Notes: generated by a model not told the origin, from the sequence alone. Counted from the whole stretch's first letter, positions 23,089 through 29,869 are shown. The stretch is DNA of 55,196 bases, filler included, from Sluysia triapertura (GCA_046118255.1; 4 parts of 4 records of this genome joined end to end with filler, not necessarily neighbours in it), one strand, 5' to 3'. Numbers and translations are program-made.

Positions 23089-24472
23089 TTACGCGACTTG
23101 GTAAATCATTTTCTCCTTATTAATTAAATGATTAGTGTGTCGAATAAGTCCAAGTAATTTATCAATATTACCAGACCATTCTTCCAGTAACTGTTCTGCA
23201 TCTTTACCAACTTTAACAAAATGCACTATTCCATCCAATCTATCTATTTTAGCATCAACTGTTTTACTAACAACCAAATCATTTAAATAACGTTCTAGAT
23301 CACTCTCTGGAATATCTAATAAGCGTGCCATACGAGATAACCTTATTTGGTTATAATAATCCGCCATAACGCGAATATTGTGCTGTATTACCCGACTATG
23401 CAACATACTCCAACGTGATTCACCATCAGGTCCTTGAAACACAACATCAGATTTAAGCGAGATTTCAAATCGCTTACAAAATTCTTTCCATAAAATAACT
23501 TCTTTTGCGCAAAATATCTCTATAATTTCACTAAAAATATAAATCATAATACTACAATTACCTCACAACAATTAAACTTTCTAAATCTCTAGAGCACAAA
23601 GTTTTATGACGATATAATAAATCATTTTGTTCATTGTCATATGACGATAACAATAAATAAAGCATAACATTTTTTAAATTTTTTAGTCTTTCATCTTTAT
23701 TGTCGTTAATCGATTTCGATTTATAAATTTCATAATAATGCTTGCTCGTATTTAAATAATTATTTTCAGCCAAATCCAATTCAATCATTAATTTGTAATA
23801 TTTTAATTTTAGTTGTTCCAATGATTCATCCTGAAAACTTTTGGACGATATCTTTTTACTAATAATTTGAGTTCTGATATAATCTTTTTTGGCTAAACAT
23901 AATCTCATTTGTTCTAAAATAAATTCAATCTTTTCTTTCTTTTCCATAGAACCATAAGTTTCCACTTGTAAATCTTGTAAAATTGCAGCTGCAGCTTCTA
24001 TGTCATTGTTCTTTTCTTTAATATCTGCTAACTTTTTTGAAATCCTGGCTCTTTCATTTTCAACATATATTTTACCTTCAGTTACATTCCTGATACAATT
24101 TATTAATTCAATTTTAATTTCCTCATTAGGTGTCTTGTCAACATATTCACAAACTTTTTGAATCATTTTGGTTACGGCCTGCTTTAATTGTCCTCTTTTT
24201 TTGCAAAATAACAATAAATGTTCATTCAACTTTTTCCATTCATTAGCTTCAGTACATCTCATAACAAAATATTCTAATAACTTTCCTGTTGAAATAGCAT
24301 CAGAAGCCTAAAAATTAAATATAAAAAATAAATTTCTTACAATGCGAGTAAGCTTTTCATAGCCATAAAGTTTATCTAAAAATTGATCAATCTCTCTTAG
24401 TTCATTCATTTCCTCAATCCACTTTGGACAATCATTAGAATAATCAACATCCATTTTAATTATTTTAGACAT
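23089..24472 (-). CDS. PSMD12: 26S proteasome non-ATPase regulatory subunit 12 (Rpn5), 439 aa; exons 24472-24341, 24307-23562, 23530-23089
   Basis: MSKIIKMDVDYS..YEKLTRI|ASDAIST..KKRGQLKQAVTKMIQ..TEGKIYVENERAR..LQVETYGSMEKKEK..EQMRLCLAKKDYIRTQIISKKI..HNIRVMADYY..AKIDRLDGIVHF..HLINKEKM. GT-AG introns of 33 nt (24308-24340) and 31 nt (23531-23561) restore one 1320-nt frame. Confidence 0.97.
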
Positions 24473-25089
24473 TTTTTAATTTAATTAGATTAACTTTAAA
24501 GAAAAATGCTTAATGTATATTAATTATATAGATTATAATATTAATTCAATATGGATTCAATTAAGAAGGATTATAAACTAAAAACGAATTAAAAAACATA
24601 AATTCTATTAAAATAATTAGTTTATGTAAATAAAAATTATAAAAGAAAGTTTAAAGTATCTTCGCAAAATCTTATTAAAACAATAAAGTTTTTAACGTCA
24701 TAAAATTACTAAATATTATGTTATAATATTTTAAATCTTAATTTTGCAACTCATTAAAGCTAAGTGTTTGAATTTTATATTTACGTCCAATTATTATAAC
24801 CAAGGATTTATAATATTTTTATTTTGATGTCATAAAAATTAAGCATCCAGAATATGTAAACAGTATAGTTAAATGCAAGTATTATGTAATGCATCTGTCT
24901 AAATTGAAAAGAGAACAGTTTACTTTGATGAAAATCAAAATGGATGATAATATTAGGCTTTGATGTTTTTAAGATTATATCGGAAAATTTTTTAATTGTT
25001 AAAATTATTTATTCAGAATTTGTTATTGAATTAAAATAACTTAAGAATGAGGTTATTTACTGAGTTTGTTGTGGTTTTCTTAACTCAAC

Positions 25090-26842
25090 CTACGTCAAAA
25101 TAATTTTAAGCATGGCATTATTACAGTATGCGACGTATGATGTAAAGTGGGCGTATCTATAACTAAAGTTAATTCCTAAACGTTGTGAAACCTCTGTTAA
25201 TTTATACTTTAAGGTTGTAGGATATAATGGTTTTGTAAGTGATACTTTTAAATGGTAATTTTGATAATGTACTGTTTGATAATTAGAGTTATTTAAGTTA
25301 TTTTGGAAATTTGAGAGTAACAACACCTTTTGTGCTACACTGACAATATTTAGGTTGAAAAAAAGCGATATATGTTCAAGTCTTAGACATATCAAAGAAA
25401 AACGCAAGTTTATAAAAAATGTATATATTAAAGTTGAGGGCGACAAAGAAAGTAAAATAAAACAATGTGGATTAATCAGTAATTTAGGCAAAATGATGTC
25501 TTGGTTATGATATATATGTTTTGATATTTGGTAAACCAAGACATTGTATTTTAAGGTTGACTTATAATTGACGAAAGATATAATAATTTTATTTGATCTA
25601 TGATTAAGACTTAGTTCATTGTCATAACAATTCGTATTAAATTGATCTGTATACCTAGTACGTTTTGATTAGTTCATATTAATAAGAATAATATTAGTTT
25701 TGAATTTAAATCTAGAACTAAAACTAAATTGACTTTAAAAATAACAAATAGAATTTATTATATTTGACAAAATTTTTATTATGTTATAGTCTTTTTTATA
25801 AACACAATTAGTTCGGACCCCCAGCGCTTCAAAAGATTCCACACGGTATTCGATCTAAAAAAATAATAATTAGATGATTTGCTAAATTTATATTTCACAT
25901 GAAGGTTAAGTAAATGTAAATTAAATATTATACGATTACCTTGAGATATTTTTGTCACAAATAGATCAGTATTAACCTTAATTCTTTCAAAATTTTGTTT
26001 GTTGAAACAAGTAGAACATGCTTTGTTTAATACACTGTTGGTGATATTGTCATCATGATTGATAGATAGATTATGTCCTTGATAATTGTATGATAGATTT
26101 GAACTGTCGTTTAATTTAGAATTAAGTGTATAGGAAGAGTAGAGTACAGTTGTCGAAACTGAGGACTCTGTCGTGTCATGATTCTCGCATATACTCATTT
26201 CTTTCATTCTGGATGGATACGTCTTAAAAATCAAAATTGAATTCTTATTGACTTCATCTTTAAGTATAATGATAATTTCTTCACAATCTTGATAATCATT
26301 CGAAACTTGTTGTCTCTGTGTCGACACAATAAGTAACCTCACCAAATACTTTACAAGTAGGTCAAGAGGTTCTAAAATTTGTTCATTTATGGGATTCTCT
26401 TTTATTTCATCTAATTTCTTAGCCATACTGAAGTGTTAATTTCATTATTTTCGTAAGATGATCTTCGTATTATAAATGTGCATTTTGGATAGTAATACCT
26501 TTGTTCAGAAACATTATTTGACTTTAGACAAAAACAAACGATTTTATCTAATTGATAAGAGCATATATTGGTATAGTTTTCATTTGTGATACGGGCAGTA
26601 ACTTTAAATATGTGCTTCGCCTCATAATTAAATAATGATGAATTTTCGTGTACGTCAACAATATATACTTGAAAAGGATGTTTCAGTGAACTGTTTACGT
26701 AACATGTTTCTAATACCTGTTCAGCAAGGTGTATACTTCTTCTAATGCTCAAAATACGTTCATAAAACATATGAATAACAAAATTTTGTGAATATACGAA
26801 ATTTGAATCGACAAGCCATAATTGTTTTGCATCATCCAACAT
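25090..26842 (-). pseudogene. Orphan family member B: one long ancestral ORF (~580 codons) broken into ORFs 26411-26842, 25779-26426 and 25090-25539
   Basis: Consecutive same-strand ORFs are linked by frameshifts. The bridge KDYNIIKILSNIINSICYF*SQFSF..NIILIN runs in frame into ORF 25090-25539. Homologous to 15845-16615. Confidence 0.55.
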
Positions 26843-26994
26843 TTCACATAACAGGCTAGTATTAAAATTCTTTGAAATTTAGATTTTGTGAACACTAAAT
26901 TATAATATAAAAAACCTGGAAATTCACTCTCTAATTAGCTTAAGTTTGAAAATACTGATCACACAAGTTTAGTTACAAATTGATTTTTGAATTT

Positions 26995-28205
26995 TTCTAC
27001 TTTTAACTCCACCCAATCATATTAGTAATTAGAGTATTAAACAATGGCAATTCTGATTGGGTGACGCATTAGTAAGAGCCAAAATGATCAATATGTTGAT
27101 GACTGGCTACCAACCGTCATCAACGTTGACAGTATGATGAAAATGTAAATAGGCTGTCATCGTTGGTGATGGTGGCAACCAGTTTAGACGACAAGATTTA
27201 TTTTTGTTTAATTTTTTAATTTAATTTTAATTTTAATTTTTAGGTACAAACAATGATCCAGGTACTAATAATAATGATACTAAATGATAATGATAAAAAT
27301 AATAATAATAATAATAACATTTACTGATAATAATAATAATAACAATAATAATAACAATAACAGTAATAACGTTATTATTATTATTGTTATTGAAAGAAAT
27401 AAAACTACATAAATCTTGTAATTCTTGAATATGAACTTTTCTTTATTTTCTTTGTCCTTCTCACATAAAAATGAAAAAAAATAAAATAGGAACAAGATAT
27501 AGTAATAAGATATAGTAAGTGTCGGTTATCATTGTTGCTTAAGTTAGATAATGACTTCTCTAAAGTTATCTTAGACTTGTTTTTTGAAAATCGTAATGGT
27601 TAAAATTGTAAATGAAATGGAAAGTGTTATTTATTGGAACTTATTGAAGCTTTGTAATTGAAAACAAGATCTATGTATTAGATTTGAGTTTAAAATGCTT
27701 GTTAAAAGGTTGAAATTATTTTAATCTTTACTGATGATTACAAAATAAATCTTAGTGCACCACGATATCGTTACTGGTAAGTATTACGATGAATATGTAT
27801 AAGTGAAGTGTATTTTGGTTGGTGTAGTTGGTTGGAGGTTTTGATGCAGATGATCTATGTTTCGTGAAATGTTTGTTAGAATTGTTTGATAAAACTATTG
27901 TTTTAGGGTTTATGAAGGTTTCTGTTATGATTGTAGTTTGTTTGTTGAAATATTTAATGTATGAATGTGGTGAAGTGTTTGAAGTGAAATGTAGAAGTTT
28001 ATTATGGGATAGATGATTGAGATATTAGTTGATTTGTTGGTGTATGTAAGTTAGTGAGGTGTTGTGGTTGTCAAATGTTGTTTTATGATGTTTATAGTGA
28101 TGTAATTGTAAAATAAAAGTATGATTGTTGAGAAAATTGTTTTTTAATGAACTTAGATTTATAATTGTTAGGTTTAAATTTAAGTTATTAATGTTGACCA
28201 CTACA
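26995..28205 (-). mobile_element. Dispersed element, copy B, with defined terminus GTTGACCACTACA (minus strand TGTAGTGGTCAAC)
   Basis: Homologous to 17510-18129 and, inverted, to 29631-29869. Strongly G+T-skewed tract at 27790-28190. Confidence 0.7.
27010..27180 (+). other. Double-hairpin module, copy B
   Basis: 10-bp inverted pair CACCCAATCA/TGATTGGGTG, then a 20-bp stem 27113-27132/27154-27173 with two G-T pairs and one mismatch. Confidence 0.8.
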
Positions 28206-28949
28206 TTATATATATATAGCCTACGAATTAAAAATATATTACCTACAAAGCGATGAATATCGTTAATGAATATATGTTTGTTTATATTGTGATTAAACTC
28301 AACTTAATCTAATTTTATTACAGAATAAACACTTAATACAACTTTAACTCATAACACATGCAACAAAATTTTCAATCCAAATCACATATTCATTGATCAT
28401 TTAATAGTCTTCATACGTTCTGTATCTCACAACTTTCGAAATTAATAAATTTCCAACTTCATCCAATATAAAGTTTCGACCTTAAATCATTCCACTAGAA
28501 AACTTCATTTTACAGATCACCTGCAGACTTAAATAACTTTTTTCAAAAAAATTGCATTTATTTTTTAAACGATCATTTCTTATTACTATTTATTACCATT
28601 TGTTATAATAAGATAAATCGTTTTTGAAATATTAGTTAATTTAAATATAAACTTTACCGACCTAATTAAAGGTCATGGCTTTAGTATGAGATATAATATG
28701 AATTTGCATTTAAATTTAAGATTTATATTAAATTGAAATGGTTCATTAAAAATAATATTAAAGTTAAAAAAAATATGATTATAGAAACATTTAAAATTAT
28801 GATTAGATTGTCATTATTAAAACCTTTATGAAGGATAAAATAAAAATAAGTATTAAAACATTTACTGAACATGAAATAGATTAGGACGTCAATTGAAACT
28901 GTTATTCTAAAGTTTATATGAGAGTGATGATTGTTTATGTTTGTGCGTA

Positions 28950-29578
28950 TTACTGTCCATTCGACGCTTCTAAAAAGAAAAGTTTATAGTTAAAACTTTT
29001 ACAAAACATTTTATAAATCAAATTATTTACTTTTGAATTTAACATGTTATTGGAGAGGGTATTTCTTGACCTGAGTTCTAAACTAGAAATAAGACTTGTG
29101 ATCCGATTAACATTGTCGTAGAAGAACTGCTCATCGTTTGCATCGTGTTGTACTTCTGAGATCTTGTGCGTATATTTGCAAATAGCACCACATCTTGAAT
29201 ATTGTCCATAAAGTGACATGCCATATGTAGACAAATGCCACGTTTATAATGATCTTTTAGAGTAATCCTTTTGCGTGATGCTTTTCTAACTGGCACATAA
29301 GAATACGATAACTTTTATGGATTAAATACAGATTCATGCATTTGGTATTAAATCGGCTATTGTGACATATGTGAAACTGTTTCATCAATATCCATACCTG
29401 TCAAATGCATTAAAAGACCTTTATTTGGCATTAAATATATATGAGAAGGATTTAAATCAAGTATAGATACGCAGTGATTAACATTTGAAGAATTAGCAGA
29501 CACTATTTCGTTAGAGTTACATTTTGAATTATTTTGAATTTGTGTCAAAATTCGATGTATAAGAATTTGGAAAGACAT
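28950..29578 (-). pseudogene. Decayed gene fragment with a degenerate CCCH zinc finger
   Basis: HYKRGIC /frameshift/ MSLYGQYSRCGAICKYTHKISEV resembles the YKTxxC-x8-C-x5-C-x3-H finger of TIS11/Roquin type. Stops lie between the ORF pieces. Confidence 0.45.
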
Positions 29579-29630
29579 TGTTGAATCAGAAAATTAAAAT
29601 ATTGAAGTGTAGAATACGATGAACAGTAAC

Positions 29631-29869
29631 TGTAGTGGCCAACCCCTTAACTTAAAAATAAAATAAAATTTATCACATAAAACAACACTACTCATCACAC
29701 CCTCAAACATAAAACACCACTCAACTCATTTCATAAAACAATAAAATACAATCTTAACACTTCACCGAACTACATCTCACAATAAATTAATTCATATCTG
29801 AACATTCCCAACTCAATAAACTCTTACATTCATTTCAACAACTCAAAACACTCACTCACTAAACACCTT
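29631..29869 (+). mobile_element. Dispersed element, copy C (terminus and A+C-rich tract; cut by the contig end)
   Basis: Starts TGTAGTGGCCAAC....TAACTTAA. CATAAAACAA..ACAA..AACAC.TCAC..AATAAACT..TACATT matches the reverse complement of 27975-28090. Confidence 0.7.

What the first reader, a model, noticed from the sequence alone, without database searches (positions are those of the whole stretch)
25090..28205. Unrecognised dispersed unit: defined terminus, skewed tract, double hairpin and orphan gene, on two contigs plus a third partial copy
Seen: read on the minus strand, 28205->25090 and 18129->15845 share one order: a conserved middle block, a TTA-rich tract, a 15-20-bp hairpin, inverted CCAAT-containing arms, then a long disrupted ORF of the same protein family. 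Copy B begins TGTAGTGGTCAAC followed by ~400 nt of A+C-rich sequence. An inverted copy at 29631 begins TGTAGTGGCCAAC with the same tract. The hairpin arm TGATGGTGGCAAC (27167-27179) is an imperfect inverted match to that terminus. Knowledge: subterminal inverted repeats with an internal microsatellite and a hairpin are the layout of Helentron/DINE-1-type rolling-circle elements. Inference: this is an undescribed mobile or gene-amplifying unit carrying its own orphan gene; no transposase, Rep or RT motif is visible in it.
Basis: partly seen in the sequence, partly recalled or inferred. Interest (0 to 1): 0.8.

Follow-up and report, generated by a model that had tools for sequence, protein, structure and literature searches.

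The report
Orphan gene flank with inverted G-poor repeat
The hairpins, the microsatellite, the strongly G-poor tract with a shared 13-base end and the gene without relatives are all real, but this contig shows only two old head-to-head copies, which an ordinary local inverted duplication explains as well as a new mobile element does.

Summary
Most sequence features are confirmed. TGTAGTGGYCAAC occurs twice (28205->28193 minus, 29631-29643 plus). Each copy leads into an A+C-rich tract with only 2.5-2.8% G. The two tracts align in register (79% identity in non-gap columns, 25 short gaps, z 7.5-9.8), and similarity stops at the 13-mer. The (TAA)n/(TTA)n tract, an 82-nt hairpin (z -4.7) and 10-bp inverted CCAAT arms are real.

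The "disrupted" ORF can be joined by canonical GT-AG introns, so it may be a spliced gene. It has no Pfam family and no credible relative among 1.84 billion representative proteins.

The Helentron/DINE-1 reading fails where it could be tested. The proposed subterminal inverted repeat is no better than chance, the bases flanking the two ends are A and C rather than T, and no 3' end can be placed.

The two copies lie head-to-head, 1.4 kb apart. Arms of an inverted duplication, or long terminal inverted repeats, share their inner boundary by construction, so the shared end does not show mobility.

Copy number could not be measured. The host is an AT-rich, animal-like genome; PSMD12 lies next door.

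Verdict: real but probably ordinary; mobility unproven.

The parts
28193..28205 (-). Boundary motif TGTAGTGGTCAAC, the point where similarity between the two copies begins
   Evidence: one of only two matches in the piece (shuffles give a mean of 0.15 matches; 3 of 100 give two or more); no similarity beyond it.
27790..28192 (-). G-depleted A+C-rich tract, copy 1 (about 400 nt; only 7 C on the plus strand between 27788 and 28197)
   Evidence: Homologous to copy 2 in register. No tandem substructure of note.
27396..27789 (-). Its conservation could not be tested because copy 2 is cut off by the contig end.
   Evidence: No ORF of 50 aa or more lies wholly inside it (one 71-aa low-complexity TTG ORF, 27280-27495 minus, runs in from the microsatellite) and no Rfam match.
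27266..27391 (.). (TAA)n microsatellite followed by its complement (TTA)n, forming an imperfect palindrome
   Evidence: period 3, 34 copies. pair I9: arms 27298-27321 and 27368-27391, 92% complementary.
27102..27183 (.). Long imperfect hairpin: arms of about 30 nt with a 21-nt loop
   Evidence: -19.7 kcal/mol on the minus strand and -21.2 on the plus strand, z -4.7, 0 of 200 shuffles as good.
27010..27064 (.). Perfect 10-bp inverted arms CACCCAATCA / TGATTGGGTG with a 35-nt spacer. This gives two CCAAT boxes in opposite orientation 168-222 nt upstream of the ATG. Reading them as NF-Y-type promoter boxes is an inference.
   Evidence: z -2.2. The consensus comparison rests on established knowledge of NF-Y sites and was not tested.
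26411..26842 (-). Gene A, first open frame (143 aa from the ATG at 26842). Exon 1 probably ends at 26499 or 26429.
   Evidence: Coding-like codon-position bias. No Pfam family. No credible relative among 1.84 billion representatives.
25779..26426 (-). Gene A, second open frame (215 aa). It can be joined to the first by a GT-AG intron, 26498..26428 (71 nt) or 26428..26397 (32 nt).
   Evidence: No Pfam, word-search or PDB match.
28950..29578 (-). Gene B, in the unique spacer between the two copies. Its three ORF pieces can be joined by GT-AG introns of 66, 29 and 33 nt. It is unrelated to gene A, and its ATG lies 52 nt from the end of copy 2.
   Evidence: No Pfam family.
29631..29643 (+). Boundary motif, copy 2: TGTAGTGGCCAAC
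29644..29869 (+). G-depleted tract, copy 2, cut off by the end of the piece (2 G in 231 nt)

Best explanation
The region 25779-28205 is an ordinary lineage-specific gene (gene A) together with about 1.36 kb of upstream DNA. Gene A is spliced, probably intact, and has no detectable relatives.

The upstream DNA contains, going away from the gene: a double CCAAT promoter-like palindrome, a long hairpin, a TAA/TTA microsatellite, and a strongly G-poor tract of about 400 nt.

A second, old copy of at least the outer 240 nt of this flank lies head-to-head, 1.4 kb away. The two copies are 79% identical in aligned columns, with many short gaps.

The most economical mechanism is amplification by segmental duplication, here a local inverted duplication around a unique spacer that carries gene B. 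Under that mechanism the shared 'terminus' TGTAGTGGYCAAC is simply the inner breakpoint, which both arms share by construction.

Shown: the parts themselves, their order, the homology of the tracts, the sharp end of that homology, and the absence of protein relatives.

Inferred: the splicing of gene A, the promoter role of the CCAAT arms, and duplication rather than transposition as the mechanism.

G stays rare in both diverged copies, which suggests a strand-asymmetric mutation bias or a constraint. This also is inferred.
For: - The two copies are inverted and 1,425 bp apart. Similarity is strong in register (z 7.5-9.8) and vanishes exactly at the 13-mers (z -0.8). An inverted duplication with a unique spacer predicts exactly this.
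- There is no second terminus, no direct repeat and no significant terminal or subterminal inverted repeat for the unit.
- No transposase, Rep, RT or integrase domain is present.
- Gene A has long stop-free frames in a genome where about 8.6% of random codons are stops: 143 and 215 codons, chance about 2.5e-6 and 4e-9 from base composition. Its frames can be joined by canonical introns, and the neighbouring PSMD12 gene has verified introns of 31 and 33 nt.
- The CCAAT arms and a TATA-like run lie at promoter distance from the ATG.
- Of 48 mismatch columns between the copies, only 3 involve G.
Against: - The piece ends inside copy 2, so it is not shown that copy 2 continues into the middle block, the hairpins and an A-like gene.
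- The 13-mer is conserved 12 of 13 against 79% elsewhere. The chance of this is about 5% if the lower 68% figure is used, and the start of an alignment is biased towards matches.
- If the piece's edge at 29869 is a contig end, the contig stops inside a copy. Assemblies tend to do this in high-copy repeats, which would favour a dispersed family. This is inference.
- The G-poor tract has sharp compositional limits on both sides (about 27790 and 28192), which looks like a discrete inserted module.
Confidence: 0.4

Rival explanations
1. The G-poor tract is the end of an old interspersed repeat, a transposable-element fragment of unknown family, that is independent of gene A. Two diverged copies happen to lie in opposite orientation 1.4 kb apart. 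The 'unit' is then a composite of a repeat fragment and an unrelated gene with its promoter.
For: - The end is sharp and identical in both copies, with unrelated flanks.
- The tract is compositionally discrete, about 27790-28192.
- The piece ends inside copy 2.
- The contig also holds other decayed repeats: a pogo-like element and tRNA-derived SINE-like pieces.
Against: - No known element signature was found. The end is not TC...CTRR. There is no direct-repeat partner as an LTR would need. There are no inverted ends for the module.
- No Rfam or Pfam match.
- Only two copies were seen.
Confidence: 0.27
2. The whole 3.1 kb is a non-autonomous mobile or gene-amplifying unit with a defined 5' end, which carries gene A and is moved by an unseen autonomous partner. 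The partner could be of Helentron type or something else.
For: - Two copies share the 5' end with unrelated flanks.
- The layout of microsatellite plus palindromes loosely recalls HINE/DINE-1.
- G-poverty is kept in both copies. This could reflect a need for an unstructured single strand, which is speculation.
Against: - The subterminal inverted repeat is at chance level.
- The flanks at the two 5' ends are A and C, not T.
- No 3' end can be defined.
- The hairpin is more than 1.3 kb from the far end of the ORF, whereas HINEs place it 8-35 bp from the 3' terminus.
- The head-to-head arrangement makes a shared inner boundary trivial.
- At 21-30% divergence, the copies show no sign of recent activity.
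Confidence: 0.15
3. The two tracts are the long terminal inverted repeats of a single old DNA element. The element's interior would be the 1.4-kb spacer with gene B, as in a foldback element or a MULE (Mutator-like element). Gene A would merely be the left neighbour.
For: - The arms are inverted, at least 240 nt long, and flank a unique core that holds a small gene.
- The left arm ends compositionally at about 27790, giving arms of about 415 nt.
Against: - Gene B has no transposase or other domain.
- The outer ends and target-site duplication cannot be seen, because the right arm is cut by the contig end.
- Conservation is not highest at the presumed outer ends.
Confidence: 0.1

Closest known systems
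Helentron-derived non-autonomous elements (HINE / DINE-1), as described in PMC4067079
   Same: A non-coding stretch with a central microsatellite and palindromes, and a sharply defined end shared by two copies.
   Different: - No significant 12-15-bp subterminal inverted repeats.
- The flanks are not T.
- The palindrome is not near a definable 3' end.
- The supposed unit carries a whole spliced gene and is 3 kb long.
- No Rep/helicase partner is known.
- Only 2 copies were seen.
Local inverted segmental duplication producing head-to-head paralogues
   Same: Two inverted arms around a unique spacer. Homology ends at the same unit position in both arms. The arms are diverged, and the gene on the visible arm points away from the spacer.
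   Different: It is not shown that the second arm carries a paralogue of gene A. The extreme and maintained G-depletion of the arms is not explained by duplication alone.
DNA transposons with long terminal inverted repeats (foldback elements, MULEs / Pack-MULEs)
   Same: Inverted arms of several hundred bases that enclose a short core with a small gene of unknown function.
   Different: No transposase, no visible outer termini or target-site duplication, and no subrepeats in the arms.
Promoters with paired CCAAT (NF-Y) boxes
   Same: Two CCAATCA motifs in opposite orientation lie 168-222 nt upstream of the ATG, and a TATA-like run lies nearer the ATG.
   Different: The function is untested, and the perfect 10-bp palindromic arms are longer than a plain NF-Y site needs.

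Membership tests
Helentron / HINE / DINE-1 | 12-15-bp subterminal inverted repeats, 2-4 nt from the 5' terminus and 38-60 bp from the 3' terminus (PMC4067079) | tested here: not met
   The proposed partner 27167-27179 matches 8 of 13 bases. The best inverted match of the terminus anywhere in 25090-28150 scores 8, which 38% of shuffles reach. No match within 2 mismatches.
Helentron / HINE / DINE-1 | Short palindrome 8-35 bp from the 3' terminus | tested here: inconclusive
   Strong hairpin at 27102-27183, but no 3' terminus can be defined. If the ORF is part of the unit, the hairpin is more than 1.3 kb from the end.
Helentron / HINE / DINE-1 | Insertion within a TT dinucleotide, with T at the boundaries | tested here: not met
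   The flanks of the two 5' ends read ...TATAA|TGTAG and ...GTAAC|TGTAG. Only the 5' side is visible.
Helentron / HINE / DINE-1 | Autonomous partner that shares the ends and encodes Rep/helicase/endonuclease | not testable with these tools
   The source genome is not in any searchable collection. No such domain occurs in the piece.
Helentron / HINE / DINE-1 | Many dispersed copies with common ends | not testable with these tools
Scans of metagenome and viral contigs gave only chance hits.
Canonical Helitron | 5' TC and 3' CTRR, with a hairpin 10-12 nt before the 3' end | tested here: not met
   The end reads TGTAGTGG. No CTRR occurs at the right distance after the hairpin on either strand.
LTR retroelement | Direct long terminal repeats TG...CA, followed by a primer-binding site | tested here: not met
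   No direct repeat of the tract in the piece. The tract does not end in CA followed by a tRNA-complementary site. No RT or gag domain.
Long-TIR DNA transposon | Inverted terminal arms with defined outer ends and a target-site duplication | tested here: inconclusive
   Inverted arms are present. The outer end of the right arm lies beyond the contig, and there is no transposase.
Inverted segmental duplication | Two inverted arms, a unique spacer, and homology ending at the same unit position in both arms | tested here: met
   The full extent of the right arm is not visible.

The most novel reading that the evidence does not exclude
The 3.1 kb is one copy of an undescribed non-autonomous mobile or gene-amplifying unit. 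Its 5' end would be the conserved 13-mer followed by a leader of about 400 nt that is kept almost free of G. Such a strand can fold only at its defined palindromes, so the unit might move as a single strand, carrying and multiplying its own orphan gene and promoter.
Probability: 0.13. Interest if true: 0.65.

Novelty: new member of a known kind. Interest (0 to 1): 0.3.

Why it matters
If the unit is only a duplicated gene flank or an old repeat fragment, it is routine annotation material for an AT-rich animal genome.

It would matter only if a whole-assembly search showed many copies with identical ends that each carry an intact orphan gene. That would be a gene-carrying mobile unit with no recognisable transposition machinery.

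The maintained near-absence of G over 400 nt in two diverged copies is the one feature that none of the explanations offered here accounts for. It deserves a look in the full genome.

Tried and rejected
1. **Read laying for copy number and expression.** Local scripts that compared the piece with itself and with the two fetched loci L001 and L002 did include them.
3. **Pattern scans.** The terminus pattern gave one metagenome hit, L001. It has 35% GC, bacterial-like coding sequence, no tract and no blastn similarity, so it is chance. There was no hit in viral contigs. The CCAAT palindrome gave one viral contig, L002, with 50% GC and no other similarity, also chance.
4. **Relatives of gene A.**
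   - Pfam found nothing, and the word search found nothing, not even the ORF itself.
   - The full HMMER search gave two hits, both tandem-repeat translations. Their scores are sums over 12 and 3 repeated stretches, and a single stretch scores about 27 bits, far below significance for that library.
   - The motif QVYIVDVHENSSLFNY recalls kinase subdomain V of TGF-beta receptors, but no kinase appears in Pfam or PDB searches. This idea was rejected.
5. **AlphaFold2 of the first ORF.** Mean pLDDT was 34, which is unusable, so no fold search was run.
6. **Mitochondrial insert as the source of the G+T-rich strand.** In copy 1 every frame has stops under mitochondrial codes. Copy 2 has one frame with no stops under those codes, which I attribute to few stop codons in this composition. 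Neither translation looks like a membrane protein. Rejected.
7. **Gene B as a member of gene A's family.** No similarity was found.
8. **The 149-aa ORF at 25090-25539.** It has no coding bias in any frame and no family. It probably stays open because the strand is G-poor.

Full report
**Context**

The piece 18230-29869 has about 26% GC. It carries a PSMD12/Rpn5 proteasome gene on the minus strand at 23089-24472, with Pfam PSMD12-CSN4_N at 1e-80 plus PCI and RPN5_C.

That gene's best solved relatives are mammalian PSMD12 at 4e-78. Yeast Rpn5 scores 1e-49. The host is therefore an animal or a close relative.

The gene's two verified introns are 33 and 31 nt long, of the form GTAA...TTTTTAG. The organism names returned by the run search were coded.

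**The observation**

The 13-mer TGTAGTGGYCAAC occurs exactly twice, at 28205->28193 on the minus strand and at 29631-29643 on the plus strand.

| Stretch | Strand | A | C | G | T |
|---|---|---|---|---|---|
| 27780-28205 | minus | 44% | 25% | 2.8% | 28% |
| 29631-29869 | plus | 44% | 28% | 2.5% | 26% |

- The piece as a whole has 13% G.
- Between 27788 and 28197 there are only 7 C on the plus strand. Between 29639 and 29869 there are only 2 G.
- The two tracts are homologous in register. The local score is z 7.5 against shuffles, and 9.8 for bases 100-239.
- A blastn segment gives 69% over 139 bp at E 2e-5. A global alignment has 178 matches, 48 mismatches and 25 short gaps.
- On the far side of the 13-mers there is no similarity, z -0.8.

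- The (TAA)n/(TTA)n tract at 27266-27391 is itself a palindrome.
- The hairpin at 27102-27183 has arms of about 30 nt (z -4.7).
- The perfect 10-bp CCAAT arms lie at 27010-27019 and 27055-27064.

**What does not hold**

- The hairpin arm 27167-27179 matches the terminus at 8 of 13 bases. The best inverted match of the terminus anywhere in the unit is reached by 38% of shuffles.
- The ORF pieces in the spacer (28950-29578) are unrelated to the main ORF.
- The copy on the other contig is masked and could not be examined.

**The gene**

The frames 26842->26411 (143 aa) and 26426->25779 (215 aa) are far longer than chance allows at this composition.

They can be joined by a canonical GT-AG intron, either 26498..26428 (71 nt, phase 2) or 26428..26397 (32 nt, phase 0). 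The second has the size of the genome's verified introns.

Codon-position bias favours the read frame. 'Disrupted' may therefore simply mean 'spliced'.

No relative was found by any search:

- Pfam gave nothing.
- The word search gave nothing, not even the ORF itself, so the source genome is not in that collection.
- The exhaustive HMMER search gave two hits. Both are translations of tandem repeats, and their scores are sums over repeated stretches of about 27 bits each, so they are not significant.
- PDB sequence searches gave nothing better than E of about 1.
- A single-sequence AlphaFold model was unusable, with pLDDT 34.

The spacer ORFs can likewise be joined by GT-AG introns of 66, 29 and 33 nt into a small gene B. 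It also has no family.

**Interpretation**

The two copies are head-to-head with a unique spacer of 1,425 bp. In that geometry the inner limits of the arms coincide at the same unit position by construction. This is true both for an inverted duplication and for a pair of long terminal inverted repeats. The 'defined terminus' shared by the two visible copies therefore does not demonstrate insertion.

Against the defining features of Helentron-derived elements (PMC4067079):

- The subterminal repeats fail.
- The T flanks fail.
- The 3' palindrome cannot be placed relative to an end.

Helitron and LTR signatures are also absent.

I rank the explanations as follows:

| Explanation | Confidence |
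|---|---|
| Duplicated gene-plus-flank unit, amplified by segmental (inverted) duplication | 0.40 |
| Tract is the end of an independent old repeat | 0.27 |
| Long-TIR element around gene B | 0.10 |

If the piece's edge is a contig end, the contig stops inside copy 2. That hints at a multi-copy family, but it is only circumstantial.

**Unexplained**

Both diverged copies stay almost free of G. Of the 48 mismatch columns, 20 are C/T, 13 are A/T and 12 are A/C, and only 3 involve G. None is an A/G transition.

This points to a strand-asymmetric mutation process, such as cytosine loss on the G+T-rich strand, or to selection for a G-free strand. The data here cannot tell these apart.

**Limits**

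Those letters were not sent to any later database, pattern or paper search. Local scripts comparing the piece with itself and with the fetched loci L001 and L002 did include them.
- Scans of metagenome and viral contigs gave only chance hits.

Noticed in passing
window 23089-24472 (minus): An apparently intact PSMD12/Rpn5 proteasome lid subunit gene with introns of 33 nt (24340-24308) and 31 nt (23561-23531). It is much closer to mammalian PSMD12 than to yeast Rpn5, so the host is animal-like and has unusually short introns.
   Followed up: partly
window 21179-22425: A decayed pogo/Tigger-like DNA transposon. It has imperfect inverted ends that begin TACAGTAAAATCTCTCTTATCCGG, stop-ridden plus-strand reading with an N-terminal HTH-like stretch, and a C-terminal '...KQKSMPDYF' motif typical of pogo transposases. 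The motif comparison is from memory and was not tested by a family scan.
   Followed up: partly
window 20935-21085 and 21695-21815: Two partial copies of a tRNA-derived SINE-like repeat that share AAGGCCTAAA(G)TGCCAT and GGTCAGTYCATTTWATGAAGTYTAACAC. The first keeps the A box (weak Rfam tRNA match, 22 bits). The second keeps the B box GGTTCGAACC and lies inside the pogo-like element.
   Followed up: no
window 25090-25539 (minus): A 149-aa stop-free frame in a moderately G-poor stretch downstream of gene A. It has no coding bias and no family, so it is probably open by composition alone.
   Followed up: partly
window 20391-20405 (plus): GGTTGCCACTACTGT resembles the boundary motif GTTGACCACTACA with one deletion. 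No tract follows it, so it is probably chance.
   Followed up: no
window 28950-29578 (minus): A small possible gene B with Cys/His-rich stretches (KRGICLHMACHF). Its ATG lies only 52 nt from the end of tract copy 2, so the G+T-rich strand of that tract sits directly upstream of it.
   Followed up: partly
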